Virus record (IMG/VR): IMGVR_UViG_3300042934_000980
Coordinates: 156,496-220,495 of that record
Length of the DNA stretch: 64,000 bases
Direction: 5' to 3' (one strand)
Shown in pieces: positions 20,506-29,505 of the stretch. The notes under the pieces are model-generated. The model did no database searches. It worked only from the letters and a program-made list of their open reading frames with translations, and was not told the DNA's origin. The translations under genes and the position numbers were made by a program. Positions within the stretch are counted from its first letter, which is position 1, and each line of letters starts with the position of its first letter.

Positions 20506-21099
20506 TCAGACGGCTGGTTCTTCTGGGAAGGTCAGTTGACCATAATCGGTATCAGGGATGGTGAACACCTCAGCTTGCGCCACGGCGTGAACAACGCTAC
20601 CCCAGATGCACGGGGCGTCGATCGACACAGTGGTGGCGTCTGCGGTGACTTCTTGATCCAGCGTGTCGTACTTGAGCGCTGTGGCAAACGCAGCTTTGGC
20701 AGCAGCAGGACGGTCAGCTTCGGCTGTGCCGTGCGGCAGCAAGATTGCGATCTTGGTGGTGGTCCCGTCTTCGTCCAGGAACGCGTAGGTGCCGGGTACT
20801 ACCAGCGCCTTGACCGCGTCAAAGTCTTCGTAGACGGTAGCATCCGTCATGTCGTAACCGCGGGCGCTGTTGGGGTTTGCAGCGGTCCAAGATTGCTCCA
20901 GACCGATAAAGCGACGCGCTGCCGACTTTACGGTAGCCGAACGCAGACCATTGGCACCTGACGTGATGTCTTCGAAGGAGAGTTCTGCTTCAGTCAAACC
21001 GTCGAACAACGCTTTCTTCTCAGCATCGTCTTTATAACGATTCAGGTTGAAAGCCACGAAACGGGTGACGAACAGACTCATCCGGGAGGATTTAGCCAT
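20506..21099 (-). CDS. putative virion protein (paralog family with 5946 and 21216)
   Basis: 197 aa, alignable over most of its length; TATG late-type motif upstream. Confidence 0.75.
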   Translation of the reverse strand: MAKSSRMSLFVTRFVAFNLNRYKDDAEKKALFDGLTEAELSFEDITSGANGLRSATVKSAARRFIGLEQSWTAANPNSARGYDMTDATVYEDFDAVKALVVPGTYAFLDEDGTTTKIAILLPHGTAEADRPAAAKAAFATALKYDTLDQEVTADATTVSIDAPCIWGSVVHAVAQAEVFTIPDTDYGQLTFPEEPAV

Positions 21100-21215: not shown

Positions 21216-21785
21216 TTAGCCGTTGAGGTCCATCGGCTCACCTGGCTGCAGTTCAGCTACAGGCGCCTTGGCGACCACGTAGTCGACTTCACCGTAGATG
21301 GTGTCGCCTTCCACGATGATGGTGCCATCGGTCGCGGTGATCTGGTCAGCCGGGATGTCGTACTTGAGCGCGTCGATCAGCACGGCAGTGGCGGCGTCGG
21401 CTTGCTGGGCTTCAGCGGTGCCTTCGGCGATGACCACAACGGCCTTGGCGTCAGCGCCTTCGCCGACCAGGTACACACCAGGCTCTTGCTTGGCTTGTGC
21501 CGCGTCCGTGTCAGCCAGTGTCTCGCTGTCGGTCAGGGTCAGGACTTTGGGGCTGTTGACATTGGCCGACTTCCAGGTCTGATCAGGCCCGGTAAAGTTG
21601 CGACCTTGCGAGTCGATGTTGGCGGTGCGCACGCCATCGGCTTGGTGCTGGATGTTGGTGATCTGCAGATCTTCCAGGGTCAGGCCTTCGAAGCTCTTCA
21701 GCATTTCCTTGTCGGCTTTGTACAGCTGCTGGTTCTTCTGAACGAAAGGCCCCAGCAGAAGGCTTAGGGGCGATTGCTTGCTCAT
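21216..21785 (-). CDS. putative virion protein (paralog family with 5946 and 20506)
   Basis: 189 aa; ALKYD and GTAEA motifs shared with 20506. Confidence 0.75.
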   Translation of the reverse strand: MSKQSPLSLLLGPFVQKNQQLYKADKEMLKSFEGLTLEDLQITNIQHQADGVRTANIDSQGRNFTGPDQTWKSANVNSPKVLTLTDSETLADTDAAQAKQEPGVYLVGEGADAKAVVVIAEGTAEAQQADAATAVLIDALKYDIPADQITATDGTIIVEGDTIYGEVDYVVAKAPVAELQPGEPMDLNG

Positions 21786-22055: not shown

Positions 22056-22083
22056 TACTACCTCAAAGATACAAAAAAGAAAA

Positions 22084-22107
22084 GCAAGGGAAATGACTCT
22101 CCCTTGC
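22084..22107 (-). terminator. terminator after chaperonin
   Basis: GCAAGGGA/TCCCTTGC stem with T-run on minus strand. Confidence 0.65.
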
Positions 22108-22119
22108 CTTACTTAGGTC

Positions 22120-23841
22120 TTAGTGCGTCTTGACCGCGTGCAGCTTGTCGCCCAACAGCAGGCTGCTGGCATTGGCCAAGATCTTGGCTGTTTGCAGGCC
22201 GCCCTTAAGCGCTGTGACCAACGCGAACGCAGTGTCGTACACACCCAGGTCTTGAGCTTGTCCCGTTTCACCGGTGGCCAAGTTGGTGATGTCCGGTACA
22301 TTACCTGCGTACTTTTTGAGCAGCTCTGGCAGGTCAGGTATGTACGCACCCTCGTCGCTTTGCTTGGCCAGATGCACGTACGGCACGCACACCAGCTCGG
22401 CTAGGCGTTCGAGGATCTTTGCATCCGTCTTGTCCCGGGCGAAGGTCACCGGATACAGGCTTTCCTTATTCTTGGGGGCAAGGACCACATGGTCTTGGTG
22501 ATGGCAGTGATCATAAAGATCCGACAACACCAACAATCCAGCCTTCATCAACGAGGTACCGGCGCCTGGCAGAATGCCGTTGTCCAACGCACTCTTGACC
22601 GCCTTGACGACGTCCTCGAACCGATCCAAACGCTCCTTCACGTCCGAATAGGTTTCACCGCCCACAAAGATGGTGACCAACTGGCCGCGCAGGTTACGGA
22701 TCCGGCTTTCGTTGAACTTGGCGCGTACGCTGAAACGGTCACCCATTTCGTACCCGCTCAGTTCTTGCTCGATGGCATCAGCACGCTGCTGCACGCGCAC
22801 TAAGGCATTAGCATCCAGCTCGCTCACCAACGAGCGGCTGTTGCCGACCGTGACGTGCATGTTCGGAACGTTGAACTCCGCACCCACCGCGTCTTGCAGC
22901 TGAGTGAACATCGGCACGCCAAAGATGGTGGCGATATCACCCATGATCAAGCTGCCCACCGAACCACCGGCGTTGGTGTTGATCCCCACGAAAGTTGGGC
23001 CGCCCAGGAAGGTGTTGACCATTCCACCCATGCGTGCACTGGATTTTACTTGGTTATTGATGTTGGCCATGACAGCCCCCACCTCATGCTCGATCGAGCG
23101 GGCAATGATAAGGATGTGGTCGGTCTGGCCCTTGAACTGGTCATGCAGCTTGATCAGCTCATCGGTCAGGTCCGCACCACGCCCCAGCGTACCGTCGATC
23201 ACCACCGGGATGAAGTTTTCCAGCAAAGTGTCGGCACCGTTGCCGTACTTGCTAAAGCCTGGGTTACTGAAACTCATGTTCAGTGGCAGGCCGTTGCTGT
23301 GCACCACCTTGTCTTCGCTGCTCTGGCCTTCCTTGAGCTCGATGGCAGGGTAACGATCACCCGACTGCTTGTAGATGTCGGTGATGATGGTCGACAGCTC
23401 GTGGTCGCTGTTGGAGGAGGTCAGGGCCAGCTTGAACAACCGATCGTCTTCCGGGGTAACCTGGATGGCGAGGCTGCGCAGCTTCTTGCCGATCTCACCG
23501 ATCACTTGCTCGATGAAACGCTGTTCACGAAAGCTCTTGAACTGGCTGAGCACGCTGTACAGTTCAGCGGTCAACATGACGGTGGTGGTGGTGCCATCGC
23601 CACACTCGTGGTCGGTCTTGATCGCCGCTTCAACGATCACCCGGTTAATGACCTCATCACGCGGGTCATCGAACTTGATGGACTTGGCGACCGTCACGCC
23701 ATCCTTGGTGACCTTAACCGAGGTGCCGGTGCCGATCAAAGCGAGTTTGCCATTGGGACCCATGGTGGCCACAACTGCTTGGTGTACCTTGGTCATGACG
23801 TCTTTGACCATGTCCTGGGTGTTATCCAAAGTCAGCAGCAT
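22120..23841 (-). CDS. groEL: GroEL-like phage chaperonin (EL gp146 type)
   Basis: TMGPNG, VTKDGVTVAKSI, GDGTTT, VGGETYSDVKERLDRFEDVVKAVKSALDNGILPG; no GGM tail; no GroES gene adjacent. Confidence 0.95.
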   Translation of the reverse strand: MLLTLDNTQDMVKDVMTKVHQAVVATMGPNGKLALIGTGTSVKVTKDGVTVAKSIKFDDPRDEVINRVIVEAAIKTDHECGDGTTTTVMLTAELYSVLSQFKSFREQRFIEQVIGEIGKKLRSLAIQVTPEDDRLFKLALTSSNSDHELSTIITDIYKQSGDRYPAIELKEGQSSEDKVVHSNGLPLNMSFSNPGFSKYGNGADTLLENFIPVVIDGTLGRGADLTDELIKLHDQFKGQTDHILIIARSIEHEVGAVMANINNQVKSSARMGGMVNTFLGGPTFVGINTNAGGSVGSLIMGDIATIFGVPMFTQLQDAVGAEFNVPNMHVTVGNSRSLVSELDANALVRVQQRADAIEQELSGYEMGDRFSVRAKFNESRIRNLRGQLVTIFVGGETYSDVKERLDRFEDVVKAVKSALDNGILPGAGTSLMKAGLLVLSDLYDHCHHQDHVVLAPKNKESLYPVTFARDKTDAKILERLAELVCVPYVHLAKQSDEGAYIPDLPELLKKYAGNVPDITNLATGETGQAQDLGVYDTAFALVTALKGGLQTAKILANASSLLLGDKLHAVKTH

Positions 23842-23998: not shown

Positions 23999-24364
23999 CT
24001 ACGAAGCCTGGGCAGCCTTTTTGGACTGCCACGGTTCTTTCTGGACCAGGAAGAGAAGTTTTTCCTTGTTGTGCTCTTCAAACACAAACGCTGAGTCAGC
24101 GACAAAGCGGTGCGGTTCGGTAACCGAAATCAACACCTCAAAGTCAATGCCTTGCTCCAGGATATTCTCCACCTGCCCAATGCAGTCTTGGCTGTCCACG
24201 TCACCTTCTGGTTGCATGACCAGTAGCACTAAGCCGCTGTCGATCATCAACTTCAGGCGCTCGTACTGTTCAGGCTCAAGGACGTTGGGAACTTTAACGG
24301 TAATCATGGGGTCCTCAGGTAATATACCCGCCTCAGTGATGCAACAGTGAAAAGGGGTAACCAC
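23999..24364 (-). CDS. hypothetical protein
   Basis: 121 aa in operon. Confidence 0.65.
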   Translation of the reverse strand: MVTPFHCCITEAGILPEDPMITVKVPNVLEPEQYERLKLMIDSGLVLLVMQPEGDVDSQDCIGQVENILEQGIDFEVLISVTEPHRFVADSAFVFEEHNKEKLLFLVQKEPWQSKKAAQAS

Positions 24365-24369
24365 TACCC

Positions 24370-24717
24370 CTACACGATTTTAGGTTTACGCATGTCTTTC
24401 ATGATGCGAAACGAGGTGTCGTCGTGGGCCAGTCTGAGTGGCTCACGGGTGCTCTCGTGTTCTTGTCGTTCCGCTTCATTACGTTCTGCGTGCGCTAGGT
24501 GTTCATTCAAGTCCGACTCGCGACCTTGGGTGTAGAGCTCGTAACAGGTTTGACACATGAGGTGATGCTCAGCGCCCCATTTGTCGTGCTTAGCCAGATA
24601 ACCAAACGCTTGATCACCCTCATGGAGGTGTTCACAATGGTCACCTTCAGATACCCGGCCATCCTCACAGAACCCTACTAACCGCTCTGTCGGACCCCAG
24701 GTAATCCAGGTGTCCAT
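24370..24717 (-). CDS. Cys/His metal-binding protein, paralog of 25262..25702
   Basis: HCEHL...H..G.E..LMCxxCYE. Confidence 0.75.
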   Translation of the reverse strand: MDTWITWGPTERLVGFCEDGRVSEGDHCEHLHEGDQAFGYLAKHDKWGAEHHLMCQTCYELYTQGRESDLNEHLAHAERNEAERQEHESTREPLRLAHDDTSFRIMKDMRKPKIV

Positions 24718-24719
24718 TA

Positions 24720-25265
24720 TCAGTCATCCTTTTCAGGTTTGGGTGGGGGTTGCTTCTTTACCGCCTTGGGGAGTTTAAACACTTGGATCTTGCCCCCGGT
24801 ATGAGGATCCATGTCCTTGGCCAGTTTAATGGCCCCTTTAGCACCCTTACCTAAGCGCAGCGCAGCTTCGGCGTGAATGCCACCTGACCCGATACCAAAG
24901 GGGACGTAACACCGTGTTACGTTGAAGGTGTCGGGGACGTTAGCCCCTTGCTTGTAACTGCCCTGTATCGACCACCCATTATGAAACTCATCGATCACAA
25001 TGGCTGAAAAGCTCATCTTGGTCGCGATCTTAAGTTCAGTGCGGTGAGTGATCCCTTCTTTGCTTTGCAAGGCTTCTTTAATGAAAAGCTCACAACCTGG
25101 CTGCCCTGCCCGTCCAAAGGCAATCACTCGCTGGCCCATGATTTTCCATTCTTCCCCGACCTCAGGAAAAAGGATCTTCCTTACCGTGGCATTGGAAATA
25201 ATCCCGCCACGCACCCGACGTGAATCGGAAGCGAGTTTGCCTTTTGTCCAAATAACTGTAGTCAT
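24720..25265 (-). CDS. Ntn-hydrolase (HslV/proteasome-beta-like) peptidase
   Basis: N-terminal MTT, LASDSR, RKI, GIGSGG and D.HTGG motifs. Confidence 0.75.
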   Translation of the reverse strand: MTTVIWTKGKLASDSRRVRGGIISNATVRKILFPEVGEEWKIMGQRVIAFGRAGQPGCELFIKEALQSKEGITHRTELKIATKMSFSAIVIDEFHNGWSIQGSYKQGANVPDTFNVTRCYVPFGIGSGGIHAEAALRLGKGAKGAIKLAKDMDPHTGGKIQVFKLPKAVKKQPPPKPEKDD

Positions 25266-25702
25266 AGGTCGTCTTCTCTATCCCAGTGTTCGTCGTCCAG
25301 CGATTCCATTTCTTCACGGTCGCGGTCGATCTCTTGTTGATCTCGCAGCAACCGATCCTTGTGCCGGGCTTCTTGTTGACAGCCTTTGCAGATACGCATG
25401 CGGATCCGTTCGTACTCAGGAGTGCCTGGGTCGTACGGGGTGTAGGTTACAGTCTGACTGCGCGGAAACTCACCCCCGCAGTCGTGGCACGTGGTCGGCT
25501 CTTCCCGCTTCTCCACCACGAACTTCTCGTAGCAGGGCTTGCACATCAGGTACATCTCAGAGCCGAACGAATCGTGCTCAGACGAATGCCCGAACACTTC
25601 ACCCCCATTGTCCAAGTGTTCGCAGTGACCGCCCTCGCAAACATTCCCATCCATGACAAACCCAACTTCTTTGTGGGTCAAGCCAAAGGTAGTCCAACCC
25701 AT
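25262..25702 (-). CDS. Cys/His metal-binding protein with extra CxxC...CxxC finger
   Basis: HCEHL..LMCKPCYE plus CHDC and CKGC; start placed at MGWTT (ORF-track extension overlaps 25704..26072). Confidence 0.75.
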   Translation of the reverse strand: MGWTTFGLTHKEVGFVMDGNVCEGGHCEHLDNGGEVFGHSSEHDSFGSEMYLMCKPCYEKFVVEKREEPTTCHDCGGEFPRSQTVTYTPYDPGTPEYERIRMRICKGCQQEARHKDRLLRDQQEIDRDREEMESLDDEHWDREDDL

Positions 25703-25703
25703 A

Positions 25704-26072
25704 TCAGTGCACTCCTTTGGGAGCTGAGTGGAGCATGGCAGGGGCGGTGACTTTGATCGAGCGCAGGTAATCTTCAGCCTGCACGTCAGCCGGGTGGAAT
25801 TCGTTGAGCAGGTCGCAAACAAACTTGCCGATCTCTTGTTGCTGCACCGGATTGCCCTCGCGGTCAACAATAGCCGGTTTACCCGTGGCTTTGTCGGTAC
25901 CCCGAAAGTACACGTCCCGGTACGCGTCAATCCGCTTACCCAAGCGCTTTTGGAAATTGGCCAGAAACGTTGCGGCGTCCTGATCACCTGCTTTGGCGCG
26001 TTCGTTGAGCTGGTTAAGCAGCCGGATGGTTGCAACTTCCAACGGGGAAAGGATGTTCTTGAAATGGTCCAT
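25704..26072 (-). CDS. hypothetical protein
   Basis: 122 aa, AGGAG SD. Confidence 0.75.
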   Translation of the reverse strand: MDHFKNILSPLEVATIRLLNQLNERAKAGDQDAATFLANFQKRLGKRIDAYRDVYFRGTDKATGKPAIVDREGNPVQQQEIGKFVCDLLNEFHPADVQAEDYLRSIKVTAPAMLHSAPKGVH

Positions 26073-27691: not shown

Positions 27692-28132
27692 TCAATTGAT
27701 TTCAGTCATGCCGATGGTGATGGGAATGAACCCCAGGGATTGGTAAAACAATTGAGCCTCTTTGTTGTTGATCACGGTGTTGACCCGGGCAGAGCCCGAA
27801 ATCATCTCCTTGATCTGGCGCACCAGTTCCTTACCAATGCCTTGTCGCCGCCGTTCCTCGATGACGTACAACCCAGAGATGCAACCTGGGTCGCGCTTGG
27901 TCGTACAGATAAAGCCTAAGAGCTTGGTGTTCTCTATGGCCAGTGCCAGCTTACCCACTTGCATGTAAGCGGTGGTCGCTGCGGCCACCAGTTGCTCATC
28001 GGTCATCTCAACCCGGTCCAGTAAGTGGAACCGGTCCTCATTACCCAGTTTGATGAACAGCTCCTTTAAGCCATGGGTTTTGGGGTAGTCGGAATGGGGG
28101 TTGACAACAGGCAGTTTAACGTAATGAATCAT
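27692..28132 (-). CDS. GNAT family acetyltransferase
   Basis: LYVIEERRRQGIGKEL (motif A) and NKEAQLFYQSLGF (motif B). Confidence 0.9.
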   Translation of the reverse strand: MIHYVKLPVVNPHSDYPKTHGLKELFIKLGNEDRFHLLDRVEMTDEQLVAAATTAYMQVGKLALAIENTKLLGFICTTKRDPGCISGLYVIEERRRQGIGKELVRQIKEMISGSARVNTVINNKEAQLFYQSLGFIPITIGMTEIN

Positions 28133-28218
28133 GGTGAGACTCCTTGTTTTACACACCTAACAACCCAAGGACCTAACGGCCCCTGAGTCGTCATAACGGA
28201 TGGAGGATGGGGTTTAAT

Positions 28219-29505
28219 TTAAGAGACCAGTTCGAGCACAGGTCTCCAGCCAATGTCAGCGTTGACGTTGGTGGCAACGGTAACAAAGTAGTTGTTGATG
28301 CTGCGGCGCAGCACCACGTAGCCGCTGGCGGCGGCGTTGGACTGGTTACGGGTACTGGTCTCGTAACACAAGGTGGAAGCACCGTTGGCGTACGTTCCAG
28401 AGCTTACTACCGCGCCCAATTCAGCGTCGGTAAAGGCTGCCCATTTCTTGCCGTTGCTGGGTTGGCTGGCGCTGATGTTCTGGAACAACCGGGTCCACTC
28501 GGAGTTCAGGGTGCCGGGTGGGTTGGTGGTGTTGTGGTTGGCTGTGGCAGGGTCGGCATCAGCACCTTTGATACAGCGCACGTTGTAGGTCTTACCAGCA
28601 ATGACCACTTGCTTGGTGCCTTTGGTCAACCCTAGGGCATTGAGCTGGTTCCAGCTTAGCCCGTAACGGAATGGCTTCTTGGCCACCAGCAAGGTCTTGC
28701 CTTCCTGGGTTTGGAACTTAAGCCAGCCGGCGTCGGTGTTGGTGGCTGTACCGTTGGTCAATCCCACGGCCGTGGTCAGGTCGGCGTTACTGATCAGGTC
28801 AGCAGGGGCCACTTCACCTTGGTAGGAATCCCCCGCGTAAGGGTCAGGCCCCAAGTACTCCAGCACCGGACGCCACGCAGGTTCTTTGGAGTTGTTGGTC
28901 AGCAGTGTCACGTAGTAGTTAAGGATGCCTTTATACCCACGCACCACGCCGTACCCGGTGGCGGCCTCGTTGCTTTGCCCGATGGAAGATTTGTTACTCA
29001 CCCACGTGGAACTGGCAGTGGCACCGTTTACAGTCCCCAGATCGGCCTCTGTAAATTGCGCCCAGTTACGGCTGGCCGGGTTGGCCACGCAAACGTTTTC
29101 CAGCAATCGGTTCCATTCCGAGGCATCGGTGCCTACCGGGTTACTGGTGTCGTGCACCGCAGAGGAAGGGTCCTCATCAGCACCGGTCATGATCCGTACC
29201 AAGTACTGGCTGTTGCCAATGTTGACCTTGGCGTTGCCGTTGATCAGATCCAGCGCCAGCAGGTTGTTGTAAGACACCGCTGAACGGAACGGTCTTTTGG
29301 CAATGTGAAGGGTCTTGCCCTCCTCGGTCGTAAATTTAAGCCAGGTGGCTGTAGCGTTAGCCACTGCCCCGGCGCTTAGTCCAACCAACGCGGTAAGGTC
29401 AGCGTTGGTGATTAAATCTGTCGCGGCAATCTCGCCCAAGTAGGTGTCGTTATAGACCCGCCTGGCAGGAGTGTTGTGCGCTGAAAACAACATGGCTTCA
29501 AGCAT
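28219..29505 (-). CDS. putative virion protein with internal domain duplication
   Basis: two ~200-aa repeats (Y.GE.A..DLI.NADLT..VGL...WLKF.T.EGKTL..AK.PFR...SEW.RL...W..FT.A.LG...WRPVLE); MLEAML N-terminus. Confidence 0.8.
   Translation of the reverse strand: MLEAMLFSAHNTPARRVYNDTYLGEIAATDLITNADLTALVGLSAGAVANATATWLKFTTEEGKTLHIAKRPFRSAVSYNNLLALDLINGNAKVNIGNSQYLVRIMTGADEDPSSAVHDTSNPVGTDASEWNRLLENVCVANPASRNWAQFTEADLGTVNGATASSTWVSNKSSIGQSNEAATGYGVVRGYKGILNYYVTLLTNNSKEPAWRPVLEYLGPDPYAGDSYQGEVAPADLISNADLTTAVGLTNGTATNTDAGWLKFQTQEGKTLLVAKKPFRYGLSWNQLNALGLTKGTKQVVIAGKTYNVRCIKGADADPATANHNTTNPPGTLNSEWTRLFQNISASQPSNGKKWAAFTDAELGAVVSSGTYANGASTLCYETSTRNQSNAAASGYVVLRRSINNYFVTVATNVNADIGWRPVLELVS

What the first reader, a model, noticed from the sequence alone, without database searches (positions are those of the whole stretch)
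24370..25702. N-terminal-Thr protease sandwiched between two paralogous Cys/His zinc proteins, next to the chaperonin
Seen: the order is Zn-paralog 2 (25262..25702; HCEH..CxxC plus CxxC..CxxC), the Ntn peptidase (MTT, DSR, K, GSG) and Zn-paralog 1 (24370..24717). They are tightly coupled and lie just upstream of groEL. There is no HslU or other AAA partner in the window. Established: HslV and proteasome-beta subunits use Thr1 and normally need an ATPase or adaptor. Inference: the zinc proteins act as ATP-independent adaptors or inhibitors in a phage-encoded targeted-proteolysis module, possibly against host defence proteins or ubiquitin-like conjugates.
Basis: partly seen in the sequence, partly recalled or inferred. 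Interest (0 to 1): 0.6.

Follow-up and report, generated by a model that had tools for sequence, protein, structure and literature searches.

The report
Phage HslV-like peptidase flanked by zinc proteins
A soil jumbo phage carries an extra copy of a proteasome-like (HslV-type) threonine peptidase between two related zinc-binding proteins of unknown function, but comparison with related phages shows the two gene families usually live apart, so a dedicated protease-adaptor machine is possible only for this small lineage and is unproven.

Summary
On the minus strand lie Zn2 (25262-25702), an HslV/proteasome-beta-type peptidase (24720-25265) and Zn1 (24370-24717), translationally coupled, about 0.5-1.4 kb upstream of a phage chaperonin (22120-23841).

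The peptidase model matches E. coli HslV at Z 17.3 and keeps Thr1, Asp, Lys, GSG and the D-x-x-T-G-G motif. It starts at Met-Thr-Thr with no propeptide. No AAA+ gene was found in the 220-kb genome.

The two Zn proteins are paralogues (50% identity over 60 residues) of phage family phrog_8344. The family has two conserved zinc sites, an acidic tail and no known fold.

The adaptor reading is weakly supported. Zn-peptidase adjacency occurs only for one divergent peptidase lineage, in 4 of 4 genomes. In eight related chaperonin loci the Zn gene has no peptidase beside it. In SPN3US-like and Erwinia phages the two genes lie over 90 kb apart, and each family occurs without the other.

Most likely the peptidase is an extra, active paralogue lodged in a conserved Zn-chaperonin block. 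A lineage-specific partnership remains possible at about 20%.

The parts
25262..25702 (-). Zn2 (P0001, 146 aa): phrog_8344 family protein with two zinc sites (C27/H29/C54/C57 and C72/C75/C105/C108), a long C-terminal helix and a short acidic tail
   Evidence: phrog_8344 E 5.7e-24. Ligand columns are invariant in 11 sequences and nearly so in 71. AF2 pLDDT 93.5. No known fold. AAGGAG lies 8 nt before the ATG.
24720..25265 (-). HslV/proteasome-beta-type N-terminal-Thr peptidase (P0002, 181 aa), a divergent extra paralogue
   Evidence: phrog_1040 'peptidase HslV family' E 4.9e-25. A profile of 10 relatives hits proteasome beta5 and HslV in the PDB at E 2e-4 to 5e-3. AF2 pLDDT 87.5. VIA Z 17.3, rmsd 2.5 A over 145 residues to E. 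coli HslV, with model residue 2 on HslV residue 1. M1, T2, T3, D14, G126, G128, D153, G157 and G158 are invariant; S15, K30 and S127 nearly so.
24370..24717 (-). Zn1 (P0003, 115 aa): shortened paralogue that keeps the N-terminal sub-domain and the first zinc site only
   Evidence: 50% identity to Zn2 over residues 4-63, E 2e-21. phrog_8344 E 5.7e-7 over residues 20-65. It groups with a different Zn sub-lineage from Zn2 in the tree.
23999..24364 (-). Small conserved ORF (P0004) between Zn1 and the chaperonin; function unknown
   Evidence: Homologues sit in the same position in L006 and L014. No Pfam, PHROG, NCBIfam or Atlas lead.
22120..23841 (-). Phage GroEL-type chaperonin (P0006, 573 aa), the conserved anchor of the block
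   Evidence: Pfam Cpn60_TCP1 2e-24 and phrog_5725 6.8e-119. 45-59% identical homologues lie 0.8-2.3 kb downstream of the Zn gene in 11 other loci.
22081..22110 (-). Terminator-like hairpin (13 pairs plus T-run) just after the chaperonin stop; likely end of the transcription unit
   Evidence: Consensus scan only.
25704..26072 (-). Upstream ORF (P0005, 122 aa) ending one base before the Zn2 start; function unknown
   Evidence: ORF list and junction sequence. No family hit.

Best explanation
The locus is a run of co-transcribed accessory genes in a PhuZ- and chaperonin-encoding, EL-related jumbo phage from soil. The middle gene encodes an active-looking N-terminal-threonine peptidase of the HslV/proteasome-beta fold. 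It matures simply by removal of Met1 and has no propeptide. It is an extra, fast-evolving paralogue: the genome also keeps the ancestral HslV-like gene beside PhuZ, as phage EL does. It sits inside a conserved block whose constant members are a phrog_8344 zinc protein and the chaperonin. The two flanking zinc proteins come from two old sub-lineages of that family, and one has lost its second zinc site. The zinc family has a job of its own that does not need the peptidase. Its features suggest a small protein- or nucleic-acid-binding regulator: two structural zinc sites, a long helix and an acidic tail. By analogy with HslV and with the ATPase-less homologues BPH and Anbu, the peptidase is inferred to self-assemble into rings. 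It would then cleave peptides or unfolded chains without a phage-encoded unfoldase, alone or with a host one. Shown here: gene structure, fold, catalytic residues, paralogy, distribution and absence of a phage AAA+. Inferred: catalytic activity, oligomeric state, independence from the Zn proteins, and co-transcription.
For: Fold and catalytic set. No AAA+ in the genome. A second HslV-like gene lies next to PhuZ, syntenic with EL gp15/gp16. The Zn-adjacent copies form their own clade (100/100), apart from the distal and tandem copies. Zn and chaperonin are linked without a peptidase in L014, L015-L019, L048 and L049. Four complete relatives keep their HslV-like genes as a tandem pair about 95-130 kb from the Zn gene. 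SPN3US-like and Erwinia phages have both genes 93-144 kb apart. The peptidase occurs without Zn in EL, G010, G011 and G012. Zn occurs without the peptidase in RSF1 and AgentSmith. The Zn family is broad, 219 clusters at 50% identity. The two window paralogues fall in different Zn sub-lineages.
Against: Every known member of this particular peptidase lineage abuts a Zn-family gene, usually with a 4-nt overlap. That covers four genomes, down to about 50% peptidase identity. The Zn gene is upstream in G006 and L044, downstream in G007, and on both sides in the window. Adjacency that survives a swap of gene order is what a functional pair would show. No activity, oligomer state or expression data exist: no RNA run holds the locus. 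No function can be read from the Zn fold, so 'independent job' is an argument from distribution only.
Confidence: 0.5

Rival explanations
1. This divergent HslV paralogue has recruited the neighbouring zinc protein(s) as an ATP-independent adaptor, gate-opener, inhibitor or assembly factor, giving a small phage proteolysis module. The zinc family keeps another role in phages that lack this paralogue.
For: Adjacency holds in 4 of 4 genomes carrying this lineage, with translational coupling and with the Zn gene on either side. No phage unfoldase is available. The peptidase clade sits on a long branch, consistent with new constraints. From the sequences, the peptidase tail is basic and proline-rich while the Zn tails are acidic.
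Against: The four genomes are related and the whole block is syntenic, so adjacency may be plain inheritance. The Zn gene stays in the same place without the peptidase in 8 of 12 chaperonin loci. The families are independent in both directions elsewhere. The Zn fold resembles no known protease adaptor or inhibitor.
Confidence: 0.2
2. The zinc proteins belong functionally with the chaperonin block, for example as a co-factor, client or regulator of the phage GroEL. The peptidase is an unrelated insertion.
For: A Zn gene lies 0.8-2.3 kb upstream of the chaperonin on the same strand in all 12 loci of this group examined. The only strong terminator-like hairpin follows the chaperonin.
Against: EL has the chaperonin but no Zn-family gene. 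In SPN3US, RSF1, pVa-21 and AgentSmith no chaperonin is annotated near the Zn gene. Synteny among relatives is weak evidence of function.
Confidence: 0.12
3. The peptidase is the proteolytic half of a hybrid machine that uses the host's HslU (or another host unfoldase). The zinc proteins are irrelevant to it.
For: The closest solved structures are HslV chains (Z 16.3-17.3). The phage has no AAA+. Named phages with this family infect Pseudomonas, Salmonella, Erwinia and Escherichia, genera that from general knowledge carry hslVU.
Against: The model has a single helix (58-67) between strands 45-54 and 84-92. From my knowledge of HslV and beta-subunit structures, two helices pack there, on the face that meets HslU or the alpha ring. 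About 25 HslV residues find no counterpart. The host is unknown because the phage comes from soil metagenomes. BPH, an ATPase-less homologue, matches about as well (Z 16.4).
Confidence: 0.15

Closest known systems
HslV (ClpQ), the peptidase of bacterial HslUV (MEROPS family T1)
   Same: It has the same Ntn fold (Z 17.3, rmsd 2.5 A, 145 residues). Thr follows Met1 directly with no propeptide. The Asp, Lys, Gly-Ser-Gly and Asp-x-x-(Ser/Thr)-Gly-Gly positions are conserved. The size is similar, about 180 aa.
   Different: Identity is only 19-27%. There is no Pfam PF00227 hit. No HslU gene lies beside it or anywhere in the genome. One of the two helices on one face appears to be missing (plus my knowledge of HslV). 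It has a basic, proline-rich C-terminal tail.
Phage 'peptidase HslV family' proteins (phrog_1040), e.g. Pseudomonas phage EL gp15 and the SPN3US and Erwinia jumbo-phage homologues
   Same: It is a member by profile (E 4.9e-25), 28-36% identical to these proteins. Like them it is a stand-alone gene in phages that have no HslU gene.
   Different: Those genes sit next to PhuZ (EL) or far from any Zn-family gene. The window's copy is an additional paralogue in a separate clade, lodged beside Zn genes. None of the family has been characterised biochemically in the papers I could search.
BPH and Anbu, bacterial proteasome homologues without an ATPase partner
   Same: They are ATPase-less Thr1 peptidases of the same fold. 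BPH matches at Z 16.1-16.4.
   Different: Sequence identity to BPH is 13-17%. The ring symmetry here is unknown, and there is no evidence of common descent closer than to HslV.
phrog_8344 (e.g. SPN3US gp164, RSF1 ORF172, pVa-21 gp188)
   Same: Zn2 is a full-length member and Zn1 an N-terminal fragment-like member. They share the two zinc sites and the near-invariant N-terminal Asn-Trp.
   Different: The family has no assigned function. Only in the window's small lineage does it flank a peptidase.
[quoted passage not shown]
   Same: It is another HslV-type accessory protein of a nucleus-forming jumbo phage, and the only experimental datum found for such proteins.
   Different: The profile built from the window's family finds no match in the RAY genome at E<=0.01. 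gp116 is therefore not demonstrably the same family, and its localisation cannot be transferred.

Membership tests
HslV / proteasome beta (Ntn-hydrolase, MEROPS T1) | N-terminal threonine nucleophile exposed after Met or propeptide removal | tested here: met
   The ORF starts Met-Thr-Thr, with only 4 open codons upstream. M1, T2 and T3 are invariant in 10 relatives. Model residue 2 aligns with HslV residue 1.
HslV / proteasome beta (Ntn-hydrolase, MEROPS T1) | Catalytic helpers equivalent to Asp17, Lys33, Ser129/Gly130, Asp166 and Ser169 | tested here: met
   D14 and K30 fall in the stretch aligned to the beta5 Asp17/Lys33 segment. GSG126-128 and D153..T156-G157-G158 fall in the stretch aligned to the beta5 GSG and D-x-x-S-G-G segment. 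They are invariant or nearly so in the family. Thr replaces Ser at the last position.
HslV / proteasome beta (Ntn-hydrolase, MEROPS T1) | Alpha-beta-beta-alpha sandwich fold | tested here: met
   Foldseek probability is 1.00 to HslV, 20S beta and BPH. VIA Z is 15.9-17.3. One helix of the first helical layer seems to be absent.
HslV / proteasome beta (Ntn-hydrolase, MEROPS T1) | Match to Pfam PF00227 (Proteasome) above the gathering score | tested here: not met
   No Pfam family at E<=1. The relationship appears only with a family profile or by structure.
HslV / proteasome beta (Ntn-hydrolase, MEROPS T1) | Assembly into stacked six- or seven-membered rings enclosing the active sites | not tested
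No homo-oligomer prediction was run.
HslUV system | An adjacent or co-encoded HslU-type AAA+ unfoldase | tested here: not met
   No PF07724 or PF00004 match in the 220-kb record, which is 96% complete. Both models ring in all 14 control genomes. A host HslU cannot be tested because the host is unknown.
phrog_1040 (phage peptidase, HslV family) | Significant match to the family profile over most of its length | tested here: met
   E 4.9e-25, residues 1-172.
phrog_8344 (zinc proteins) | Significant match to the family profile | tested here: met
   Zn2 E 5.7e-24 (residues 23-131). Zn1 E 5.7e-7 (residues 20-65 only).
   The genes are adjacent only in 4 related genomes. They are apart or singly present in all other lineages examined.
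FYVE zinc finger (PF01363) | Score above the Pfam gathering threshold | tested here: not met
   18.0 bits against a cut-off of 27.8, E 0.0032. Structural matches to FYVE domains have E about 0.8-1.6.
HNH endonuclease (zinc-bound beta-beta-alpha-metal fold) | Catalytic His after the first CxxC and His directly after the second CxxC | tested here: not met
   Neither position holds His: CHDC is followed by GGEFPR and CKGC by QQEAR. Structural matches are weak, E 0.1-0.7.

The most novel reading that the evidence does not exclude
One fast-evolving lineage of phage HslV-like peptidases has become dependent on a zinc protein of a previously undescribed fold. That protein would serve as an ATP-independent adaptor, gate or inhibitor, giving jumbo phages a regulated, unfoldase-free proteolysis module. 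The window, with one full and one trimmed zinc paralogue on either side, would preserve its fullest form.
Probability: 0.18. Interest if true: 0.65.

Novelty: new member of a known kind. Interest (0 to 1): 0.35.

Why it matters
Stand-alone HslV-type peptidases are annotated in many phages, and related jumbo phages carry up to three copies. None has a known substrate, partner or oligomeric state in the papers I could search, and these phages encode no unfoldase. This locus offers a concrete, cheap test of whether such a peptidase needs a partner at all: three small genes, all expressible. It also flags a broad zinc-protein family (219 clusters at 50% identity) with a confidently predicted fold that matches nothing solved. 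If the partnership were real, it would be a new way of regulating a proteasome-like protease. If not, the finding is an ordinary case of neighbouring accessory genes.

Tried and rejected
- Co-folding of the peptidase with Zn2 returned 'no answer' (score 0.00, mark 0.32). It is not used for or against binding.
- Megablast of the locus against the phage collection found no match.
- Single-sequence PDB search for the peptidase gave only a chance hit, RIB43A, E 0.014. The family profile was needed.
- Pfam and NCBIfam gave nothing above threshold for the peptidase, Zn1, P0004 or P0005. Zn2 got only sub-threshold FYVE, DUF and rubrerythrin-like hits.
- Zn2 fold searches found no known fold: Foldseek PDB best E 0.35, VIA against 48,161 chains best Z 3.5. 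The ESM Atlas searches by structure and by features, and BFVD, returned only uncharacterised phage proteins or generic zinc ribbons. FYVE and HNH readings were rejected (see membership test).
- Pfam scan of ten longer, possibly fused Zn-family members found nothing except a marginal GAAD hit (23.2 against 23.6 bits) in one.
- I hoped to transfer the nuclear localisation of RAY gp116. The family profiles find nothing in RAY, so it was not transferred.
- The metagenome-contig scan for more members of the Zn-adjacent peptidase lineage returned only the already known contig.
- The sequencing-run search found soil DNA runs from four studies and no RNA run.
- The Atlas look-up for P0004, as a possible co-chaperonin, gave no usable hit.
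- The sigma-70 promoter scan found none in the region, so it says nothing about where the unit's transcription starts; from general knowledge, jumbo phages of this kind use their own RNA polymerases.

Full report
**What is there**

The window is the last 64 kb of a 220,495-bp viral record that CheckV rates 96% complete. Between 26072 and 22120 the minus strand carries a tight run of genes:
- P0005 (25704-26072)
- Zn2/P0001 (25262-25702)
- the peptidase P0002 (24720-25265)
- Zn1/P0003 (24370-24717)
- P0004 (23999-24364)
- after a 157-nt gap, a 573-aa chaperonin (22120-23841)

The junctions show translational coupling. One base separates P0005 from Zn2, whose start is preceded by AAGGAG. The Zn2 stop and the peptidase start overlap in ATGA. 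Two bases separate the peptidase from Zn1, whose start is preceded by AAGGA. The only strong terminator-like hairpin in the region follows the chaperonin stop at 22110-22081.

**The peptidase**

P0002 matches phrog_1040, 'peptidase HslV family', at E 4.9e-25. It matches no Pfam or NCBIfam model.

A profile of ten relatives retrieves only proteasome beta subunits and HslV from the PDB sequences, at E from 2e-4. In those alignments:
- D14 and K30 lie in the stretch aligned to the Asp17/Lys33 segment of beta5.
- GSG126-128 and D153..T156-G157-G158 lie in the stretch aligned to the beta5 GSG and D-x-x-S-G-G segment.

Across the ten relatives, M1, T2, T3, D14, G126, G128, D153, G157 and G158 are invariant, and S15, K30 and S127 nearly so.

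The AF2 model (pLDDT 87.5) matches HslV, 20S beta subunits and BPH with Foldseek probability 1.00. On re-alignment it gives Z 17.3, rmsd 2.5 A over 145 residues to E. coli HslV, with model residue 2 on HslV residue 1. Only four open codons lie upstream of the ATG, so there is no propeptide. As in HslV, removal of Met1 would expose the nucleophile.

One difference stands out. The model has one helix (58-67) between strands 45-54 and 84-92. From my knowledge of HslV and beta-subunit structures, two helices pack there. About 25 HslV residues have no counterpart. I therefore file the protein as a divergent but catalytically complete member of the HslV/proteasome-beta superfamily. Activity and ring assembly are inferred, not shown.

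**No unfoldase, and a second copy**

Neither AAA_2 (the ClpX/HslU type) nor the general AAA model matches anywhere in the genome, although both ring in all 14 control genomes.

The genome has a second HslV-like gene at record position 92565-93053. It lies about 0.9 kb from a PhuZ tubulin gene that is 43% identical to EL gp16. That is the arrangement of EL gp15/gp16, so the phage is an EL-related, PhuZ- and chaperonin-encoding jumbo phage. Nearly identical DNA occurs in soil metagenomes from four studies, and no RNA run holds it.

**The zinc proteins**

Zn2 and Zn1 are 50% identical over their first 60 residues (E 2e-21), and both hit phrog_8344, a family of unknown function.

A profile search of 1.84 billion representatives finds 219 clusters at E<=1e-3. 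Most are 120-250 aa stand-alone proteins. Ten longer members carry no informative Pfam domain.

Conserved positions are C27, H29, C54 and C57 (site 1); C72, C75, C105 and C108 (site 2); H114, R117 and D121; and the N-terminal Asn-Trp. Most relatives end in a long Asp/Glu-rich tail. Zn1 keeps site 1 only.

With a 71-sequence alignment, AF2 gives a confident model (pLDDT 93.5). It shows a beta-rich N-terminal sub-domain, a zinc ribbon and a long C-terminal helix. It matches nothing solved: Foldseek best E 0.35 and VIA best Z 3.5. Atlas and BFVD return only uncharacterised phage proteins. FYVE and HNH readings fail their defining features.

**Is the linkage conserved?**

Evidence against a general partnership:
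- In SPN3US-like and Erwinia jumbo phages both families are present but 93-144 kb apart.
- EL and three smaller phages (41-82 kb) have the peptidase and no Zn-family gene.
- Ralstonia phage RSF1 and Bacillus phage AgentSmith have the Zn family and no peptidase.
- Four complete relatives carry the Zn gene 1.7-2.3 kb upstream of the chaperonin with no peptidase nearby. Their HslV-like genes form a tandem pair, one starting MTT or MTS and one MSV or MST, about 95-130 kb away.
- Four further chaperonin loci (L014, L016, L048, L049) also have the Zn gene without a peptidase.

The constant unit is therefore Zn plus chaperonin, seen in 12 of 12 loci. The peptidase is present in 4 of them.

Evidence for a lineage-specific link:
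- The window's peptidase and its relatives at 69% and 65% identity form a separate, long-branched clade (100/100), distinct from the PhuZ-linked and tandem copies. The more distant relative P0008 (49-51% identity) was not in that tree; I group it with them by identity and a shared C-terminal tail.
- Every member abuts a Zn-family gene. G006 has Zn then peptidase with a 4-nt overlap. G007 has peptidase then Zn with a 4-nt overlap, between the same flanking genes. Contig L044 has Zn then peptidase with a 4-nt overlap. The window has a Zn gene on both sides.
- A scan of 241 million metagenome records found no further member, so n stays at four related genomes.

**How the sandwich arose**

In the Zn tree, Zn2 groups with the peptidase-less L014/P0010 type (90/95). 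Zn1 groups with P0016 and P0018, which are also peptidase-less, and with the G006/G007 Zn proteins (91/94). The two flanking genes are therefore old sub-lineages, not a fresh local duplication.

The simplest history, which is inference, is an ancestral Zn-peptidase-Zn arrangement within the chaperonin block. Different descendants then lost different parts. The window keeps all three, with Zn1 trimmed.

**Verdict on mechanism**

I commit, at about 0.5, to the reading that these are neighbours without an obligate partnership:
- The peptidase is an extra, active HslV-type paralogue. It works as a self-assembling peptidase without a phage unfoldase, alone or with a host one.
- The zinc family has a peptidase-independent role.

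The 4 of 4 adjacency on either side supports it. It is weakened because those genomes are close kin and the Zn gene persists without the peptidase in eight related loci. The co-folding job gave no answer and is not counted either way. Two further readings are listed as rivals: Zn proteins serving the chaperonin, and the peptidase borrowing host HslU.

**Novelty and limits**

Phage 'HslV family' peptidases and phrog_8344 are both already catalogued, so this is a new member of a known kind in an unusual local arrangement. The literature I could search has no biochemical study of either family. The one experimental datum is the localisation of RAY gp116 with the phage DNA, probably inside the phage nucleus. 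It cannot be transferred, because the family profiles find no match in RAY.

Noticed in passing
Loci L023-L030 (records G001, G003, G004, G005), e.g. G005:C1:45299-46345: Four complete related jumbo phages carry two HslV-like genes in tandem. The first starts Met-Thr-Thr (Met-Thr-Ser in G001). The second starts Met-Ser-Val or Met-Ser-Thr and forms its own long-branched clade. This could be a two-subunit ring with one altered or inactive subunit.
   Followed up: partly
G000:C1:90749-93053 (outside the window; loci L032, L039): The window's own genome has a second HslV-like gene about 0.9 kb from a PhuZ tubulin gene, the same arrangement as EL gp15/gp16. The PhuZ-peptidase linkage may be the older, conserved one.
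   Followed up: partly
Window 28219-29505 (- strand): A 428-aa ORF is made of two similar halves of about 210 residues, each containing the motif ADLI(T/S)NADLT...WLKF...EGKTL...AK(R/K)PFR. It looks like an internal duplication, perhaps in a fibre or receptor-binding protein. Seen by eye only.
   Followed up: no
Window 20506-21099 and 21216-21785 (- strand): Two tandem paralogous ORFs (197 and 189 aa) lie just downstream of the chaperonin unit. A homologue sits in the same place in the relative L005 (7857-8441). Function unknown.
   Followed up: no
Window 23999-24364; L005 5085-5686; L006 5617-6194; L014 2954-3560: One or two conserved ORFs of about 100 aa always sit directly upstream of the phage chaperonin, where bacteria have groES. 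No Cpn10 match or Atlas lead was found, so whether they are co-chaperonin-like is open.
   Followed up: partly
Window 27692-28156 (- strand): The ORF ends with a GNAT-acetyltransferase-like motif (RRRQGIG...LFY..LGF). A homologue lies at the start of L006. Judged from the sequence only.
   Followed up: no
Record G008 (L008/L035): 140453-140947 and 148275-148655: In another 231-kb jumbo phage the single HslV-like gene and the Zn-family gene are on the same strand, only 7.3 kb apart. This is neither adjacent nor distant.
   Followed up: no
L005 versus L006 (records G006 and G007): Two close relatives have the peptidase and Zn genes in swapped order between identical flanking genes, each with a 4-nt overlap. 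The rearrangement mechanism is unexplained; one possibility is differential loss from a Zn-peptidase-Zn ancestor.
   Followed up: partly
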